Counted from the stretch's first letter, positions 9,396 through 23,567 are shown. The stretch is DNA of 64,000 nt from Utricularia gibba (GCA_002189035.1 NEEC01000009.1:2170001-2234000); one strand, 5' to 3'. Made by a program: numbers and translations. Notes: generated by a model not told the origin, from the letters alone.

Positions 9396-9743
9396 TGAGG
9401 AATCAACACAAGATAGAAAAACCCCGAGTTTGCTTCTTTCCATTTTGAAATTTCTTCATTTTTTTCATCAGCTGTTCTTTCTAAAGAAGCGCCTATGAAG
9501 TAGATTTACAATAGCAATTAGAAATGCATATTCGGGAATGATGCCCTCATAAAACAGACAAATTACGAAACGCACCTGAAAGCATATTCTGCAATTGTCA
9601 GAAATTACAGAACTTCCCCGGATAGAACGAGCACACAGGGGTCGTGGTAACATAACATCAAATACTGGGACGGAAATGATAAAATAAGAATTTTCCGGCA
9701 CCCTCCTGGGGGTTCAACCATTGGGCAGTCGTTGACGCAAACA

Positions 9744-10256
9744 ATGAACCCGCAGATCCGTTTCGCCTTCAAATTATTCGCCTTCGCCGGCGCTTACCTT
9801 TTCACTCGATCGCGTACTCCGCCGAGTCGGCGCAGTTATCCCGAAAAATCAATCGCGGTTCTGTTCGTCCTCGAGCATCTCAAGTGGCTATGGCTCTTCA
9901 ACGGTCGCCTCATTCGCGACGCCGAAAATCAGGCCGAGATCCTCGACGGCGACGTCCGTCTCTTCAGAGCCTTCCTCGAGGATTACCAGAATGGGCGTAA
10001 CCAAGATCCGGCGGTTCAAGATCTGGCGGATCAGATCCGAATCGTAGTTGCGCAATCGGAATCTGTGCTCGCTTCGGCTCGCCGACTAACCGTCGAGAAA
10101 CATAGCCAGAATTTTCTACAGAGAAATTTCAGCGTTTCGATGGATCTCAAGAACGCCACCAAAGATCTCCACACCTTGAAGGCTAAGGTGAATAGCATTT
10201 ACGAAAAGAGCAGTGCTATTTGCGCCGCGCGAAAGGCGCGCCTGCGGGCGACCTGA
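9744..10256 (+). CDS. Stand-alone NLR coiled-coil (Rx-N/NRC-like) domain protein with a 35-aa N-terminal extension; no NB-ARC or LRR
   Basis: Intronless 170-aa ORF. AVLFVLEHLKWLWLFNGRLIRDAENQAEILDGDVRLFRAFLED...LADQIRIVVAQSESVL aligns by eye with asterid CC-NLR N-termini (A-V-x-F-L-L-E-N-L-K-Q-L-L ... D-L-R-L-F-K-A-F-L ... I-R-D-V-V-Y-E-A-E-D-V-I-D). No P-loop is visible downstream. Confidence 0.75.
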   Translation: MNPQIRFAFKLFAFAGAYLFTRSRTPPSRRSYPEKSIAVLFVLEHLKWLWLFNGRLIRDAENQAEILDGDVRLFRAFLEDYQNGRNQDPAVQDLADQIRIVVAQSESVLASARRLTVEKHSQNFLQRNFSVSMDLKNATKDLHTLKAKVNSIYEKSSAICAARKARLRAT

Positions 10257-10601
10257 GATTCGCCGCCGGTGGCGATGGTGGTAGCGGTATTGCATTAGTA
10301 CGGAATGTGTTTGTTTGATTTGCTTAAAATCCCAGTAAATTTGAATGAAGGTATGCTTAGTTCACGTAGCTAGGAATCGGTGTTCGGTGACTGCCCAATG
10401 TATATAAATTATGGCAGCAACACCGTACACATTGACTAATGTTTTTAATATAATTATATGCTTAATTGCATGTAAAACTGCCGAAATAAATGTTAAATTA
10501 AAATAGAATGAGTTGGGATGATTCTTAAAATTTTGGAATTCCATTGCAGAAACCTTATCCACCCACGTTTTGGAGCAAGAGGTATAACAAAGGTAATCCA
10601 T

Positions 10602-10790: not shown

Positions 10791-13228
10791 ATGGAGGGAT
10801 TAGCCGCGAGAAACTTGGCTGCATTGGCCGTCTGTAATTTCCCAATCACGGTTTCCTCGAGGAGGAATAGGCTGAAAAATGAGTTGGGTTTCTCTATGAA
10901 TGCACAAAGATTGCAGATTGCGGCGAACCTTTGTGTCCCTCCGGCCGCTGTGAGCGGGGGAACCGAGAGTTGTTTGGAGGTTCCCGTGAAGGAAGATTTT
11001 GCGGATGAGGAAGATTACGTGAAGGCAGGTGGGTCTGAGATTTTGTTCGTTCAAATGCAGAAGGAGAAGAGCATGGATTTGCAATCAAAGCTTTCTGACA
11101 AGGTGGCTACTGTGTTACGTTTAGTTGTTGCTTAAGAATGGTTCGGTGATTCTATCTGTTTCTGTTGTTATACTCTTAGTTGCCAAGAATTTCACCTAAT
11201 GATGGAACGTTGGACTTGGTTGTAATTGGCTGTGGACCTGCTGGTTTGGCTCTGGCTGCAGAATCGGCTAAGCTAGGGTTGAATGTAGGTCTAATTGGCC
11301 CTGATCTTCCTTTTACAAATAATTATGGTGTGTGGGAGGATGAGTTTAAAGGTGCTGACTTATCTGAAGCAATTCATCTCTTTGTACACTATTTACGCAA
11401 TGCCCCTGACGCAGGATGTGTCTTTTTTCAGATCTTGGTCTAGAATGCTGCATCGAGCATGTATGGGGGGATACAATTGTGTATCTTGACGACAACAATC
11501 CAATATCCATCGGGCGTGCATATGGGCGTGTGAGTCGGCATTTGCTCCATGAAGAGTTGCTAAAAAGGTGGATGTCGATTGCCACTGTTGAAGGATCTCT
11601 CGTTCCTCATCACGTACTCTTCTGTGTTTCTTACCCTTTTATTCTTGGTAGGTGTGTTGAATCTGGCGTTTCATATCTTAGCACGAAAGTTGAAAGGATA
11701 GTTGAAGCTTCAAGTGGCCAAAGACTTGTAGAGTGTGAAGGCAATTTTGTTGTCCCTTGCAGGTGATCCTAGGCCTGATAAATTTAGTGCATGGGTCTCT
11801 CAACTGCATAACTAAATCTGGGTGGCTTGGTGCTGGAATTATAGCTGAATCATCATCATCATCACTTTGCACTTTACACTTCACAGGCTTGTGACTGTAG
11901 CATCTGGTGCAGCATCAGGGAAGTTCCTCGAGTACGATGTTGGAGGTCCAAGAGTCTCAGTCCAGACGGCGTATGGTGTTGAGGTTGAGGTAGGATTAAA
12001 GAATGCAGCTCTTCTATATGTTAGCTTTCAGTTAGAAGGGAAAGATGAGGCCAGCTTGATCCTTTCAGGTGGAAAACAGTCCATATGACCCTAACCTGAT
12101 GGTTTTCATGGATTATAGAGACTACACAAGTCACCGAGCTCAATGCCTAGAATTAGAATACCCAACATTTCTATACGCCATGCCAATGTCACCAACTAGA
12201 ATTTTCTTTGAGGTGTGATCAAAACTCCATAAGTTATAACTGTTGCACTGTAAAAGGATCCCGGTTTTTCATTTAGTAGCTGACAGAGAACCTTAACAGG
12301 AAACCTGTTTAGCCTCAAAAGACGCCATGCCATTTGAACTTCTAAAGAAAAAGCTCATGTTGAGGCTGGAGACAATGGGAGTTCGCATTGTTCAAACTTA
12401 TGAGGAGGTACCTGAATCAATCTTGATGAGTTGCAGTTATTCCTTCCTGCTGGATGGATTGCTATCGCTACATGAAACTTTGTGCAGGAGTGGTCATACA
12501 TACCTGTTGGTGGTTCCTTGCCAAACACAGAGCAAAAGAACCTAGCCTTTGGTGCAGCTGCTAGCATGGTTCACCCAGCAACAGGTACTATTACAGCATT
12601 GAAATTTGCATCATGATGAATTGGAGCAACTTCCAAACATGAACTAAGACAATGAAACACAGGCTATTCAGTGGTTAGATCCCTATCGGAAGCTCCAAAA
12701 TATGCATCTGTTATTGCAAGTATTTTGGAACGAGACAACCTAAGGAATGCAAAACAGTGGCCAAGAGCTGTTCCTGAGAATATCTCAATGCAAGGTAATG
12801 AATGACACATGAGCTTCTACACATATGTAGCAAGTACCCCTAACTGCTCACTTGCTTCAGCATGGAATGCACTTTGGCCGATAGAAAGGAAACGACAACG
12901 TGCCTTTTTTCTATTCGGATTAGCTCTCATACTGCAACTCGACACCAAAGGCATACGAACATTCTTCGACTCATTCTTCCGCCTACCTAAATGGTAAGTG
13001 TATCAAGAAACACACACTCCCCTAATCACTCGGATCATATCTCGTTTTTTCTTCCTCTGCAGGATGTCTCAAGGATTCTTGGGCTCAACACTTTCGTCTT
13101 TGGATCTGATGCTGTTTGCTTTGTACATGTTCGTGGTGGCCCCAAATGACATGAGGAAGCGCCTCATCAACCACCTTCTGTCTGATCCAACAGGGAGCAT
13201 CATGGTTAAAACTTATCTCTCTCTATAG
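10791..13228 (+). CDS. LCYE: Lycopene epsilon-cyclase
   Basis: DLVVIGCGPAGLALA (FAD binding), NNYGVWEDEF, PTFLYAMP, EEWSYIPVGGSLP, KRQRAFFLFGLALILQLD, about 10 exons, ending ...KTYLSL*. ALILQL keeps Leu at the ring-number switch position, which predicts a mono-epsilon cyclase. Confidence 0.97.
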
Positions 13229-13570
13229 ATTATTACCTTTGTAGGGGCTGAACTGTGGAAGGTTAAGGCTTTTAGTGTGCTGTTCACGATGAGAAACACA
13301 TGCCCTTGCTCTTGCCCGAATTTAGGGTTTGTATAGAAGTTAAACAGCCACTCTGTTTTGTCACTGAAACTGTAACTGTACGTCTGGTAAAAAAAAAAGT
13401 AACTTGATTCACTGCGGTAATTCCAATCCATATTTTTACCATATGTATATGAACATTGGCCACCCGAATAGTGTTGAGGGTCACTACTGAATAAATGTAT
13501 CAAGAACTCTATATGAATAAAATACATTTGTATGGACAGTGTTCACGGCAACAGTGATGAACCAAAGAGC

Positions 13571-14687
13571 TCACCTAATCCACCTCGCTTGGTAAAAAAG
13601 TAAAAACGCTCTCCACCCTATCCACCGACAACACCAAACTCCCTGATTTTATGTTGAACAATGGCTCATCAGTGCCCAACCCCCTGTGCAGTGAACACAG
13701 CTCTCAGCATATTAGCAGATCAGCATTTGAAGGAGTGAGGCCGTAATAAAGCATAATCATCAAGCAGTTTTTCGCACTGAAATTTATGTGATTTGTATGC
13801 AATGGTTCACTGGGAAGATAGCATGATCTGAGACCACGGAAGATACCCTTACCCAGAAAATTCAGGCAAAACAACTGACCACCGGAACCCGAGGTCGACT
13901 CCTGGACACAAACCAAGGGATGTTTTGTTTTTCACAGTAGACACTCTTTCTCCAAAATAATTTGATGTAAGCTTCCATTTTACTCCTGTTGCCTTCATCT
14001 CAAAGCTATGGCCTATTCCTACCTAACCATTTGAGAGCATGAGTATCTTGATCAGCTCCATAACCATGCACAAATGCACAATCTACATTAAAAAAAGGAA
14101 CACAGTAAAGCAACCAACCTGAAGACAAAGGAACTTGGTTATCGGAATTTTCCTGGATATGACTTGCACATCTTGGTCTAGGGGAGAGCATATGAACTTC
14201 CATTTCTGGTTTTCAGCTAGCGGCTTCACCACAAGCTTCGGTTTAAAATCATTCACTGTTTCATTATAGAACTGTAAAGGCAACAGCACACTCGTATTTC
14301 AGATGATTCGCACAAAACACGAGAGCTGTAATAAGCTCTCACACCTCTTAACTTTCAAAAACAAGCCCTTCACTTAATCACCCTGAATGCGAGCATAATA
14401 AAGAACGTCAATCAATCCTTTCATTTAGCCATACCTATTGGTGGAATGTGAAGTGAGTTCATTCCATGCACAATTAACTGAAAAATCGTCTCAAATAAAA
14501 CAAAACCAGAACAAAATGAAGCGACTCTACTGAAACGAAACAGCCCAAGCAGAGAATGTACCTCCAAGTTGAGACCCAGCCGGATTCCCTGAATTTCCTT
14601 CCTAAACTTGAAGAAAATCTCATTCGGAAAAAAATTCACGTGTATCCTATCCAACAAAGTGGATTCTCCATTCGAATTCCCCTCCAT
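13571..14687 (-). CDS. Conserved plant protein of unknown function (beta-strand-rich)
   Basis: Four in-frame GT-AG exons: MEGNSNGESTLLDRIHVNFF...GLNLE / FYNETV...KWKFICSPLDQDVQVISRKIPITKFLCLQ / VGIGHSF...KWKLTS...NKTSLGLCPGVDLGFRW...LPEFSG / LGTDEPLFN...DRVESV*. It resembles a conserved uncharacterised plant family. Confidence 0.8.
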
Positions 14688-16820
14688 CTTCCCGCTCCAC
14701 ACACCAAGAATCTGTTCGAAGATCAAACCTAACTACTACAAGTATCGGCGCGGGCTGGTCCGTCACGTAAATGGAATTGGGCCTGCACCGAGTCCACAAT
14801 ATACAGGCCTACGCGGCCCATAATCCCAAGCCTTTCCATAATTGCGATATGATTAGTCATGTTTTAATTGCCATATGTAACCAATTAGATTCTCCATTCG
14901 CTTTCGTTAATCACGCGATTAGTGGTTTTTTAATCGCGACATCATACTTGAGGGCTGCGCTGGCTTAACGATTATTGGTCCACTTTTGACGACTTTCTGA
15001 AAGGTGTTTCCCACTAAACTTATTATTATTATTATTAAACCTTATTTTAATAAAATTTGTGACGTGTTCCCAAAATTAGGTACAAACCACAGAGAAAACT
15101 TTGGAAATGAAGAATTAATAGCCCCGATTTTGGTTCACCAGTCCAAATTAAGCCCTAGTTTGATTGTCAATTGTGGCATGTGTCATTTTTGTTAAATAAT
15201 AGATGTTAATCATGTGTTTTGTAGAAAAGGATATTTTTTTTGTATCCAACATATTAAAATTAAGGATTCGATAAATCATACAAATTAAACTGCACTACAT
15301 AATAAACATAAATCATATTAATAAATATTAGTATCAATCAATTAATAATGATTTTATGATTTTTATATATATTTAATTATTTATTATAATAAAAAGTATT
15401 TAAATATTAGTCTAAATCAATTAATTTATTTATTATAATACCACAAATTAAAAATGTGGTAGCTGAAGAGTGGCGAGATTTGAAGTTTCAAATCATGCAA
15501 ATCTGTGTGCTGGATGCTTTTTTGAGCAGTTTTTGTTATTATTTTTCAGAAAAAAATGGGGAAGAAGCAGTGGACAGGGAAGTTGTGCATCCCTGTCAAC
15601 TGTGGTTGTCGCTCGGGAGTCAGAGATTTTTTTTGTTCATATCCTTTATCCATCCATATCTATGTGATGCAGCGACGTGCAGCCTAATTCAATCAACGGG
15701 GAGCTTCGTCCCCGCCGTCAATGGCCGAGAAAAATGGGTTTGCATGGAAGAAAACTGGAGTCCCGTTAAACTCTGTGGTCGTTTTTGGCACCCTCTTTAG
15801 ATACCCATTTTTGAATACCGAGCGAGCGCACTGAGTGACCCTCCACCGGCCGTCGTTTCCTTTCCTGCAACTTGCTTGTCGCTTCTGTGTGACTTGACCA
15901 GTGTTTCCTGGGTTGAATCGGATCCCTCAGTCTCCCAGGGAATTGCGTTGCGTATCTCCAAGTGGCTTCCATGGAGCCAGCTCACGCATAGCTCATCTAT
16001 CAATTATTGCAGATTGATTTATGATCGTCTCCCATGTGCGCCATGGCAGCGGTTGTTGCACTTCTAACTGCTAAATTAAAACAACCTGTGTGACTGATTG
16101 ATTTATTCATTCATTCATTCTCACGCCCTTCTCTGCTTCTGTGATCCATCTTTTCACTTGGAGAAAGCACCTTCCTGTTCCATGCTTGGAGCCCAAAATG
16201 CATGGGGCCAAAGCTATAGAACCTCTATTCATGGCTTCAAGTATACAGTTGTATCCACGCACTCTACTGCGCTTACAGAGGTTACCACTCTGTGTGTTCC
16301 TACAGTGTGATATATGCATCCTAACCACCCTCTGATTAGGACACACATTGCGATCCTAAGCCTTGGGATTGTTAAAGCAACCCCAGGGACGAAAGCGAAA
16401 CTATAGGACCAGTGGACGAGGGAATACAGCCGGGTCACTCGTTTACCCACATGGGTTTGTTTCATTATGATGCGTTACAGAACCAAGCACACGCTCATCC
16501 GATCCTGAATTTCAATACTGTGAGCATCCGCTAGGGTTTTAGGAGACAGAAGAGACACTAAGGGCATACTCCATGTTCAGCAAAGAAGATAAATAGATTC
16601 AAGCTCCCAGTTACATGATCATTCGAGCATTCGACTGTCATGCTTCAGAGAGAGGTCAGTGTCACCAATCTGAGTCAATTTCTCAAGCAGTGGCGGGTAG
16701 CCTATCCAAAACAACGCTGCCATACCCTGGGCGTGTCTATAAATGAGAGTGCCCAGTTATTCCCCATTGTCCACACCAGTAACGGGAGAGCAGAGAAGAA
16801 AAGGGAAAGAGTTGGGAAGC

Positions 16821-22937: not shown

Positions 22938-23567
22938 ATGTATCGATCGCCATCGCCGTCGCCGTCGTCCCAGGAGAGCTCCCCGTCCTCCGCCGCCGGT
23001 GTCAAGTACAGAGGCGTCAGGAAGCGCAAGTGGGGGAAATACGTGTCGGAAATTAGGCTACCCAATAGCAGGGAGAGGATTTGGCTCGGCTCCTACGACA
23101 CGGCGGAACAAGCAGCGCGAGCCTTCGACGCGGCGCTCTACTGCCTCAGGGGCCGCAGCGCCAAGTTCAATTTCCCCGACACTCCGCCGGAGATAGACAA
23201 CGGTAGGTCTATGAGCCCCGCCGAGATACAGGTTGCAGCGGCGCATTTCGCGTACGCGGATTCCGGCGCCCAAGCCGAATCGGATCTGGTCGGTGCATCC
23301 GAATCTCGTTCCGGTTCTTTTGAAGGTGAAATTACGGAAATGTCTCTGGTTGACAATTACAGCACGTGTTTTGATGGTGCCAATGGTTTCATGGAGCTGG
23401 GGTCATTTTCAGAGTTCGACTCTTATTGGGATAGACCCATGACGCCGTCGCTGCTCCCGCCGGCGGGTTTCCCGGAGAACCATGAGCATGTTTTTAGCTC
23501 GGCGAGTTTCCCGGAGAACGATGAGCATGTTTTTAGCTCAGGGAGCTCATTCCTTTGGAACTTTTGA
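22938..23567 (+). CDS. AP2/ERF transcription factor, DREB A-5 (ERF016-018-like)
   Basis: Intronless. [44 protein letters not shown]; C-terminal FLWNF motif. Confidence 0.95.
23461..23538 (+). repeat. In-frame 39-bp tandem duplication within the ERF C-terminus
   Basis: cggcgggtttcccggagaaccatgagcatgtttttagct followed by cggcgagtttcccggagaacgatgagcatgtttttagct (2 mismatches). Confidence 0.95.

What the first reader, a model, noticed from the sequence alone, without database searches (positions are those of the whole stretch)
9744..10318. Stand-alone NRC/MADA-like NLR coiled-coil capped by a targeting-like N-terminal peptide
Seen: an intronless ORF whose residues ~36-155 match the four-helix CC domain of asterid CC-NLRs, including a MADA-like alpha1 helix (SIAVLFVLEHLKWLWLFN) and a degenerate EDVID (ESVLA). 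Where the Met of MADA should be, there are 35 extra residues: a hydrophobic stretch FAFKLFAFAGAYLFT followed by R/S/P-rich RSRTPPSRRSYP. In the adjacent frame just past the stop, GDLRFAAGGDGGSGIALVRNVFV* resembles the CC-to-NB-ARC linker. The gene therefore ends right at the NB-ARC boundary, and no P-loop follows. Known: the MADA helix needs a free N-terminus for resistosome pore formation. Inference: this may be a repurposed, organelle-targeted or membrane-anchored CC-only protein, either a protease-unmasked executor (RRSY resembles a mitochondrial presequence cleavage site) or a dominant-negative decoy, rather than simple debris.
Basis: partly seen in the sequence, partly recalled or inferred. 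Interest (0 to 1): 0.75.

Follow-up and report, generated by a model that had tools for sequence, protein, structure and literature searches.

The report
Conserved capped coiled-coil gene from NRC helper
This small gene is what remains of a plant immune-receptor (NRC helper) gene: only the cell-death 'head' plus a new 33-residue cap. It has been kept under selection across the mint order, so it is probably a working protein rather than debris, but its job is untested.

Summary
Window 9744-10256 (+) is an intact, intronless 170-codon ORF. Residues ~34-155 are an NLR coiled-coil (CC) domain, preceded by a 33-residue basic/hydrophobic cap. No NB-ARC or LRR lies anywhere in the 64 kb.

It is not an isolated oddity. 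I found about 22 relatives across the order Lamiales, in Gesneriaceae, Plantaginaceae, Phrymaceae, Orobanchaceae, Lamiaceae, Scrophulariaceae, Bignoniaceae, Pedaliaceae and Genlisea. Outside Gesneriaceae most are 162-186 aa. All share the cap, whose best-conserved block is YLFTRSRTP.

The family derives from the CC exon of an NRC2/3-type helper NLR. In Sesamum, Handroanthus, Erythranthe and Salvia it still sits next to such a helper gene. Decayed NB-ARC remnants survive in Gesneriaceae, Penstemon and Sesamum.

Pairwise dN/dS is about 0.25-0.35, cap included. The window's own branch gives about 0.26, and the copy groups with Genlisea (100/98 support).

The gene ends at the NB-ARC boundary because that is the ancestral exon 1/intron 1 junction.

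Function is inferred only. The most likely role is a non-executing CC protein that modulates NRC helpers, possibly directed to a membrane by its cap. I found no expression data, could not run targeting predictors, and simple hydrophobicity scales do not support a transmembrane anchor. I found no paper describing this family.

The parts
9744..10256 (+). Complete intronless ORF (170 codons plus TGA) of the capped CC-only gene
   Evidence: ORF list and sequence. Colinear from Met1 with 162-186-aa relatives in most other Lamiales families.
9744..9842 (+). Family-specific N-terminal cap, residues 1-33: basic, with no acidic residue in these 33 positions, a hydrophobic helix at about residues 3-24, then TRSRTP
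   Evidence: K10, Y18, F20 and T21 are invariant and P26 nearly invariant in 22 sequences. pN/pS is 0.30 versus Handroanthus, with 0 of 2000 bootstraps at or above 1. AF2 places a helix at 3-24 with pLDDT 72-78. Over residues 1-36 the window carries 7 basic and 1 acidic residue; across the family KD19 is 0.9-1.4 and the Hessa sum +4.5 to +7.8.
9843..10208 (+). NRC-type coiled-coil (Rx_N) domain, residues 34-155, with a MADA-like alpha1 that is no longer N-terminal and a degenerate EDVID block
   Evidence: Pfam Rx_N at residues 38-116. NRC3/NRC2a alignment, residues 36-110 to chain 3-77. AF2 with alignment gives pLDDT 83.4. VIA-align gives NRC3 Z 13.6, rmsd 2.9 A, model 52-162 to chain 19-131.
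10209..10256 (+). Poorly conserved C-terminal tail and stop codon; the TGA lies in a CCTGA motif also used as stop in Erythranthe and one Logan contig
   Evidence: DNA alignment of tails; protein alignment.
10247..10318 (+). Relic of the 3' end of the ancestral NLR exon 1 read in the +1 frame (GDGG-type linker), with the old splice-donor GT at 10298-10299; no exon 2 follows
   Evidence: Translation. Comparison with the Sesamum NRC exon 1 end (GAG|GTGACC) and family tails (TAG|GT). No NB-ARC in the window.

Best explanation
The ORF at 9744-10256 is the Lentibulariaceae member (sister to the Genlisea aurea copy) of a Lamiales-wide family of small single-exon genes.

Shown here:
- The family arose by tandem duplication of an NRC2/3-type helper NLR.
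- Only exon 1 (the CC domain) survives. The NB-ARC-LRR exon decayed or was lost, and remnants are still visible in Gesneriaceae, Penstemon and Sesamum.
- A conserved 33-residue basic/hydrophobic cap replaces the free MADA N-terminus.
- The cap and the CC have been under purifying selection since before the Gesneriaceae split, and also on the window's own branch.

Inferred:
- The MADA alpha1 helix is buried behind the cap, and the EDVID block that normally contacts the NLR's own LRR has degenerated. The protein therefore probably does not act as an autonomous ZAR1/NRC-style pore former.
- I think it most likely works as an accessory or modulator of NRC helpers: a CC subunit that associates with NRC CC domains and tunes or dampens them, with the cap setting its location or keeping alpha1 inert. 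This would be analogous to the truncated NRG1C and to NRCX.
For: - Homology: Rx_N match; family profile versus NRC3 2.9e-28, NRC2a 4.5e-25, NRC4 3.3e-19, ZAR1 1e-8. The fold is closest to NRC3/NRC4/Sr35/NRC2/ZAR1 CCs, Z 11.2-13.6 (Foldseek order).
- Parent gene: the neighbour of the Sesamum copy is a two-exon CC-NB-LRR whose second exon hits NRC2a at 3.4e-234.
- Linkage: an NRC plus capped-CC pair is present in Sesamum, Handroanthus, Erythranthe and Salvia.
- Family breadth: 43 hits in the exhaustive search, and every hit that shares the cap is short. 20 named or Logan members were found with the profile.
- Single origin: the 22 capped sequences sit on one side of a 99/98 branch, and window plus Genlisea group at 100/98.
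- Selection: pairwise omega is 0.15-0.65, mostly 0.25-0.35, in the cap as well. The window terminal branch has median dN 0.29, dS 1.09, omega 0.26. pN<pS in 2000 of 2000 bootstraps for four window pairs. A neutral 170-codon ORF survives in only 5.6% of simulations at d=0.2 and 0.1% at d=0.66.
- NB-ARC decay: in Gesneriaceae the Walker-A lysine is replaced. Sesamum keeps a 61-aa remnant cut by a copia element.
- Literature: a free N-terminal alpha1 is required in the ZAR1/NRC4 model, and N-terminal domains would preclude it (PMC6944444).
Against: - I have no transcript or protein evidence for the window copy or for any relative. The Logan contigs examined are either exactly colinear with the genome (Sesamum) or lack a poly(A) tail, so they give no sign of transcription.
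- The window copy scores just under Pfam's gathering threshold. By my reading of alignment A3 it departs from the family at 4 of 14 near-invariant positions.
- It evolves faster than the parental NRC CC: omega about 0.3 versus 0.09-0.18.
- In the window and in Genlisea no NRC gene is adjacent.
- The modulator role is by analogy only; no interaction or localisation was tested.
- The NG86 estimates use saturated dS for the window pairs.
Confidence: 0.7

Rival explanations
1. Pro-form executor. The cap is a cleavable organelle-targeting or pro-peptide. Processing near the conserved R-x-x-PEKS junction frees a MADA-like alpha1, and the CC alone oligomerises and permeabilises an organelle or other membrane.
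For: Cap residues 1-33 carry no acidic residue in most members. Over residues 1-36 the family has 5-9 basic residues against 0-2 acidic and 4-7 Ser/Thr. The PEKS junction and the hydrophobic pattern of alpha1 (V39, F41, L43, L46, L49) are conserved, and Glu is common at the position of NRC4 E11. The NRC4 N-terminal 29 residues suffice for cell death (PMC6944444). An RNL helper was reported to act at the chloroplast envelope (abstract of 10.1101/2024.09.19.613839).
Against: The hydrophobic moment is low, 0.18-0.32. No targeting predictor could be run. There is no evidence of cleavage. Oligomerisation normally needs the NB-ARC. A constitutively made pore former would be costly.
Confidence: 0.12
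2. RPW8-like membrane-tethered CC. The cap is an uncleaved signal anchor that pins the CC to an endomembrane or host-pathogen interface membrane, where it amplifies or executes defence independently of NRCs.
For: AF2 predicts a helix at residues 3-24 followed by a basic cluster, which by the positive-inside rule would leave the CC cytosolic. The architecture parallels RPW8.2 and the N-terminal anchors of flax L6/M (my own knowledge, not checked in papers here).
Against: KD19 is 0.9-1.4 (below 1.6) and the summed Hessa free energy is +4.5 to +7.8 kcal/mol. An invariant Lys sits in the middle of the hydrophobic stretch. Together these make it a poor transmembrane helix. There is no RPW8 Pfam hit.
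Confidence: 0.12
3. Decaying relic. The window copy is a pseudogenised NLR first exon that happens still to be open, lying in the intergenic space upstream of LCYE.
For: No NB-ARC or LRR is present. The Pfam score is sub-threshold. The C-terminal tail is unconserved and read in another frame than in Sesamum and Handroanthus. No expression evidence exists. The copy sits 535 bp upstream of the LCYE start codon. Degraded copies do exist elsewhere, e.g. Handroanthus P0011.
Against: Terminal-branch omega is about 0.26 with dS about 1. ORF survival under neutrality is below 6% at d=0.2. All 13 family-invariant residues are kept. The gene is retained in two compact, deletion-prone Lentibulariaceae genomes. 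The stop is at the same motif as in Erythranthe. Only very recent inactivation is compatible with these data.
Confidence: 0.12
4. Exon 1 of a full NLR whose NB-ARC-LRR exon lies elsewhere (assembly gap, long intron or trans-splicing).
For: The ancestral donor GT is still recognisable at 10298-10299. The parental gene has an intron exactly there.
Against: An in-frame stop precedes the donor. There is no NB-ARC or LRR in 64 kb. A lycopene cyclase gene follows within about 535 bp. Most members outside Gesneriaceae end at the same place, and Genlisea has a PPR gene 140 bp downstream.
Confidence: 0.02

Closest known systems
NRC helper NLRs (NRC2/NRC3/NRC4; MADA-type CC-NLRs)
   Same: The CC domain is homologous and structurally closest to theirs. 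The family is a tandem paralogue of an NRC2/3-like gene in four Lamiales families. The alpha1 hydrophobic pattern is retained.
   Different: There is no NB-ARC and no LRR. alpha1 is not at the N-terminus, with 33 extra residues in front. EDVID is degenerate. The gene has one exon and encodes 162-186 aa in most families.
NRG1C (N-terminally truncated helper that antagonises NRG1A/B) and NRCX (atypical NRC modulator)
   Same: Both are helper-NLR derivatives thought to modulate their full-length relatives rather than execute (abstracts). NRG1C is also a genomic neighbour of the full-length genes.
   Different: By its title and abstract, NRG1C is truncated at the N-terminus; that it keeps the NB-ARC/LRR part and lacks the CC-type head is my own knowledge. 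NRCX is full length. Here the opposite piece is kept, the CC head alone, with an added cap. No functional test exists.
RPW8/HR proteins of Brassicaceae (stand-alone CC_R with an N-terminal hydrophobic segment)
   Same: Small stand-alone four-helix-bundle 'head' proteins with an N-terminal hydrophobic stretch, related to the heads of helper NLRs (own knowledge).
   Different: A different domain family: only Rx_N (PF18052) is reported at E up to 10, with no RPW8 hit. Different plant order and an independent origin from NRC.
NRC-dependent sensor NLRs with N-terminal domains, and MADA/MADAL NLRs with extensions over 15 aa (e.g. Rpi-vnt1.3)
   Same: Extra residues in front of the CC would preclude a free alpha1 (PMC6944444).
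   Different: Those are full-length NLRs with extensions reaching about 600 aa or of unverified gene models. Here the extension is a short conserved peptide on a CC-only protein.

Membership tests
Rx_N / NLR coiled-coil domain (PF18052) | Score at or above Pfam's gathering threshold (27.7 bits) | tested here: not met
   The window ORF scores 25.8 bits, E=1.1e-5. Relatives score 28.5-37.4 bits and pass.
Rx_N / NLR coiled-coil domain (PF18052) | Demonstrable homology and fold of a CC-NLR four-helix bundle | tested here: met
   Family profile versus NRC3 2.9e-28 and ZAR1 1e-8. AF2 pLDDT 83.4. NRC3 Z 13.6 with 111 residues at rmsd 2.9 A; the top 8 rows are all CC-NLR resistosomes.
NLR (STAND NTPase immune receptor) | NB-ARC domain with P-loop | tested here: not met
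   No tblastn hit to an NB-ARC-LRR exon in 64 kb. The ORF ends at residue 170. LCYE follows.
NLR (STAND NTPase immune receptor) | C-terminal LRR | tested here: not met
   Same search.
MADA-CC-NLR | MADA motif at the very N-terminus (free alpha1) | tested here: not met
   The alpha1 equivalent starts at about residue 34-36. 'MADA' itself is replaced by EKSI or PEKS.
MADA-CC-NLR | Score with the published MADA HMM | not testable with these tools
   The HMM is not available here. By eye, consensus positions V6, F8, V10 (as Leu), L13 and L16 are retained.
NRC helper clade (NRC-H) | Placement in the NRC-H clade of an NB-ARC phylogeny | not testable with these tools
   There is no NB-ARC to place. 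Indirect evidence: the best PDB hits are NRC3 and NRC2, and the Sesamum tandem neighbour hits NRC2a at 3.4e-234.
RPW8 (PF05659) | Pfam RPW8 match | tested here: not met
   Only Rx_N is reported at E up to 10.
Signal-anchored / transmembrane protein | Hydrophobic segment able to span a membrane | tested here: inconclusive
   KD19 is 0.9-1.4, the Hessa sum is +4.5 to +7.8, and Lys10 is invariant. These are crude scales; DeepTMHMM and SignalP were not available.
Organelle-targeted precursor (mTP/cTP) | Predicted transit peptide and cleavage site | not testable with these tools
   Only the composition is known: basic, Ser/Thr-rich, with no acidic residue in positions 1-33 of the window cap, and muH 0.18-0.32 across the family.

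The most novel reading that the evidence does not exclude
The capped CC family is a Lamiales-specific, NB-ARC-independent cell-death or ion-channel module held inactive by a conserved pro-peptide. Targeting and cleavage of the cap at the R-x-x-PEKS junction would free a MADA-like alpha1 that then forms a pore in an organelle membrane. This would be a resistosome 'head' that has become a stand-alone, protease-gated executor.
Probability: 0.1. Interest if true: 0.9.

Novelty: new variant of a known kind. Interest (0 to 1): 0.64.

Why it matters
NLR surveys usually keep only genes with an intact NB-ARC domain (for example the methods quoted). A CC-only family like this one is therefore filtered out, and I found no paper describing it.

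NLR-derived fragments normally decay quickly. This one has kept an open frame, a conserved added N-terminal peptide and omega of about 0.3 across at least nine Lamiales families. It also survives in Genlisea and in the window's genome, both apparently compact.

Its ancestral linkage to an NRC2/3-type helper makes it a concrete candidate regulator of the NRC network, which underlies many resistance genes of asterid crops. It is also a natural experiment on whether a MADA helix tolerates, or is controlled by, an N-terminal cap. Both questions can be tested directly with standard N. benthamiana assays.

Tried and rejected
1. NB-ARC or LRR elsewhere in the window: tblastn with the Sesamum NB-LRR exon found nothing.
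2. Syntenic orthologues in an IQM-LCYE interval: none. Relatives lie beside an NRC helper, or beside AMT, peptidase C1 and kinase genes. The Genlisea copy lies between a DEAH helicase and a PPR gene.
3. Transcript evidence from Logan contigs: the Sesamum contigs L002-L006 are exactly colinear with the genome, and the two I read in full (L012, L013) lack a poly(A) tail. None gives any sign of transcription.
4. Exact look-ups of window proteins found nothing. As a calibrator, the window's ERF017-like ORF also has no near-identical protein in the collection (best 52%). The lack of a near-identical hit to the CC ORF therefore says nothing about expression.
5. Transposon capture: a perfect 12-nt inverted repeat brackets the ORF, but I saw no target-site duplication or known terminal motif. 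Left as unexplained.
6. Cap derived from the parental 5' UTR: the sequence upstream of the Sesamum NRC start codon is a GA microsatellite with no similarity to the cap.
7. Transmembrane anchor: not supported by the KD or Hessa scales.
8. Single-sequence AF2 gave a poor model (pLDDT 64), so I replaced it with the alignment-based model.
9. The ESM Atlas gave only sub-0.9 Rx_N leads.
10. IQM identity of the upstream gene: no Pfam hit, so it is not verified here.

Full report
**What is at the site**

Window 9744-10256 (+) is an uninterrupted 170-codon ORF. The open frame begins only four codons upstream, at a TTG at 9732, so the frame cannot extend much further 5'. Its G+C content is 53-56%, against 34-37% in the flanks.

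Pfam finds one family, Rx_N. Residues 38-116 match profile positions 1-79 of 93 at E=1.1e-5 and 25.8 bits, just under the 27.7-bit gathering score. Against PDB sequences the only plausible hits are NRC3, NRC2a, NRC2 and ZAR1, with query 36-110 aligned to chain 3-77. The ancestral initiator Met would therefore fall at about residue 34, and 33 residues precede it.

tblastn with an NB-ARC-LRR exon finds nothing in the 64 kb. A lycopene cyclase gene (Pfam 8.9e-18) begins about 535 bp downstream.

**It belongs to a family**

- A word search gave one hit, a 185-aa Sesamum protein that is 45% identical over 161 residues, including the N-terminal extension.
- The exhaustive HMMER search gave 43 hits. 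Every hit that shares the extension is short: Handroanthus 183 aa, Genlisea aurea 165 aa, Penstemon 230 aa, and the Gesneriaceae members 224-386 aa.
- A profile search added Sesamum alatum, two Erythranthe, Castilleja, two Salvia, Buddleja, Dorcoceras and several Logan contigs.
- In the 22-sequence alignment the cap is among the best-conserved parts. K10, Y18, F20 and T21 are invariant and P26 nearly so, and the consensus block is YLFTRSRTP. The junction to the CC reads PEKS.
- No full-length NLR with this cap was found.

**Origin from an NRC helper**

In Sesamum the gene lies about 8 kb downstream of a two-exon CC-NB-LRR. That gene starts with a canonical MADA motif and has its intron exactly at the CC/NB-ARC boundary. 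Its second exon matches NRC2a at 3.4e-234 and NRC3 at 6.8e-219.

The family profile hits NRC3 (2.9e-28), NRC2a (4.5e-25), NRC4 (3.3e-19) and ZAR1 (1e-8).

The same NRC plus capped-CC pairing is seen in Handroanthus, in Erythranthe (AMT, RPL24, NRC, capped CC, kinase) and in Salvia, where the NRC is inverted and possibly broken.

Remnants of the lost second exon survive in three lineages:
- Sesamum keeps 61 aa including a P-loop, cut by a copia element.
- Penstemon keeps a P-loop-like stretch.
- Gesneriaceae keep a longer NB-ARC in which the Walker-A lysine is replaced.

A maximum-likelihood tree puts all 22 capped sequences on one side of a branch with 99/98 support. Gesneriaceae split first, and the window copy is sister to Genlisea at 100/98. 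The family therefore predates the Gesneriaceae split and was inherited vertically. The window's genome behaves as a Lentibulariaceae. Earlier scan notes call it probably Utricularia gibba, which I did not verify.

**Why the gene stops at the NB-ARC boundary**

The tails of the family members align at DNA level up to a conserved TAG|GT, which is the old exon-1 donor. Handroanthus and Sesamum read through to it. Erythranthe, one Logan contig and the window stop earlier, at a TGA inside a shared CCTGA motif. The tail beyond about residue 155 is not conserved.

**Selection**

| Comparison | Result |
|---|---|
| Nei-Gojobori omega, eight genomic copies, all pairs | 0.15-0.65, mostly 0.25-0.35 |
| Cap alone, all pairs | 0.09-0.69 |
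| Sesamum-Handroanthus (unsaturated, dS 0.47) | omega 0.35 |
| Sesamum-Erythranthe (unsaturated, dS 0.73) | omega 0.30 |
| Window terminal branch, three-point estimates (medians) | dN 0.29, dS 1.09, omega 0.26 |
| Bootstrap over codons, four window pairs | pN<pS in 2000 of 2000 replicates |
| Bootstrap, cap alone versus Handroanthus | pN<pS in 2000 of 2000 replicates |
| Neutral simulation (substitutions only), ORF stays open | 5.6% at d=0.2; 0.1% at d=0.66 |
| Parental NRC CC exon, same species pairs | omega 0.09-0.18 |

The capped CC is less constrained than the parental CC but clearly constrained. One caveat applies: dS for the window pairs is saturated, and no likelihood codon model was run.

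**Structure and the cap**

With a 47-sequence alignment, AF2 gives pLDDT 83.4. It places helices at 3-24 (the cap), 33-83, 89-121, 124-129 and 133-169.

Foldseek's top rows are the NRC3, NRC4 and ZAR1 resistosomes, with weak E-values of 2e-3 to 0.1. VIA-align gives NRC3 Z 13.6 (111 residues, rmsd 2.9 A, model 52-162 to chain 19-131), NRC4 12.6, Sr35 12.3, NRC2 11.9 and ZAR1 11.2. Z in this range is common for helical bundles. However, the top eight rows are all CC-NLRs, and the register agrees with the sequence alignment.

Cap properties across the family, residues 1-36:
- 5-9 basic residues against 0-2 acidic, and 4-7 Ser/Thr.
- Kyte-Doolittle 19-residue maximum of 0.9-1.4.
- Summed Hessa free energy of +4.5 to +7.8 kcal/mol.
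- Hydrophobic moment of 0.18-0.32.

It is therefore a poor transmembrane helix and not strongly amphipathic. Whether it is a signal, transit or pro-peptide could not be decided here.

**Mechanism**

Shown: identity, origin, conservation and selection.

Inferred: in the ZAR1/NRC4 model a free N-terminal alpha1 is needed, and N-terminal domains would preclude it (PMC6944444). The family also lacks the NB-ARC that drives oligomerisation, and its EDVID block has decayed. I therefore favour a non-executing role as a partner or modulator of NRC helpers, by analogy with NRG1C and NRCX (abstracts), with the cap controlling location or keeping alpha1 inert.

The rivals are a protease-unmasked executor, an RPW8-like membrane-tethered CC, and recent pseudogenisation of this particular copy. 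Each keeps roughly 10-12%.

**Known or new**

Four literature searches found NRC, NRCX, NRG1C and MADA papers but nothing on a capped CC-only NRC derivative in Lamiales. Truncated NLRs and stand-alone heads are known kinds, so I rate this as a new variant of a known kind.

**Limits**

- I have no expression evidence. The Logan contigs give no sign of transcription.
- The protein collection evidently lacks this genome's proteins. Even the neighbouring ERF has no near-identical hit, so absence there is uninformative.
- One preprint states that U. gibba has lost all NLR genes, while scan notes list NLRs in this genome. This is unresolved.

Noticed in passing
window 9719-9730 and 10389-10400: A perfect 12-nt inverted repeat (CATTGGGCAGTC / GACTGCCCAATG) brackets the CC ORF and its relic tail. 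By my estimate about 0.1 such pair is expected by chance in 2 kb. I saw no target-site duplication. It could be chance, a hairpin or a trace of how the gene moved.
   Followed up: partly
L001:11895-12077 and 12643-16528 (Sesamum indicum CM090905.1): The Sesamum capped-CC gene is followed by a 61-aa NB-ARC start with a P-loop (65% identical to the neighbouring NRC). A Ty1-copia element interrupts it there.
   Followed up: partly
L011:12304-15227, minus strand (Salvia splendens): The NRC homologue next to the Salvia capped-CC gene is inverted, and its NB-LRR part matches in several separate pieces. It may be a broken helper gene.
   Followed up: no
L008:3975-4472 (Genlisea aurea KE527142.1): The Genlisea copy is squeezed between a DEAH-box helicase gene (362 bp away, opposite strand) and a PPR gene (140 bp downstream). 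This is a different neighbourhood from the window's, so the gene moved at least once within Lentibulariaceae.
   Followed up: partly
whole genome (notes) versus literature: Preprint 10.1101/2023.10.25.563953 says Utricularia gibba has lost all NLR genes. Earlier scan notes for this genome list several NLRs, including an NRC sensor-helper pair, and other notes call the genome probably U. gibba. Either the species assignment or the published statement needs checking.
   Followed up: no
P0011 (Handroanthus impetiginosus PIM97941.1): A second Handroanthus copy keeps the cap and alpha1 (56% identity over the window's residues 1-63). It has an unrelated 64-aa N-terminal addition, and its similarity to the family stops after alpha1, so it is probably a decaying duplicate.
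   Followed up: no
window 22938-23567: An intronless ERF017-like AP2/ERF ORF. Its best public relative is only 52% identical (Penstemon), which illustrates how fast this genome's proteins evolve.
   Followed up: partly
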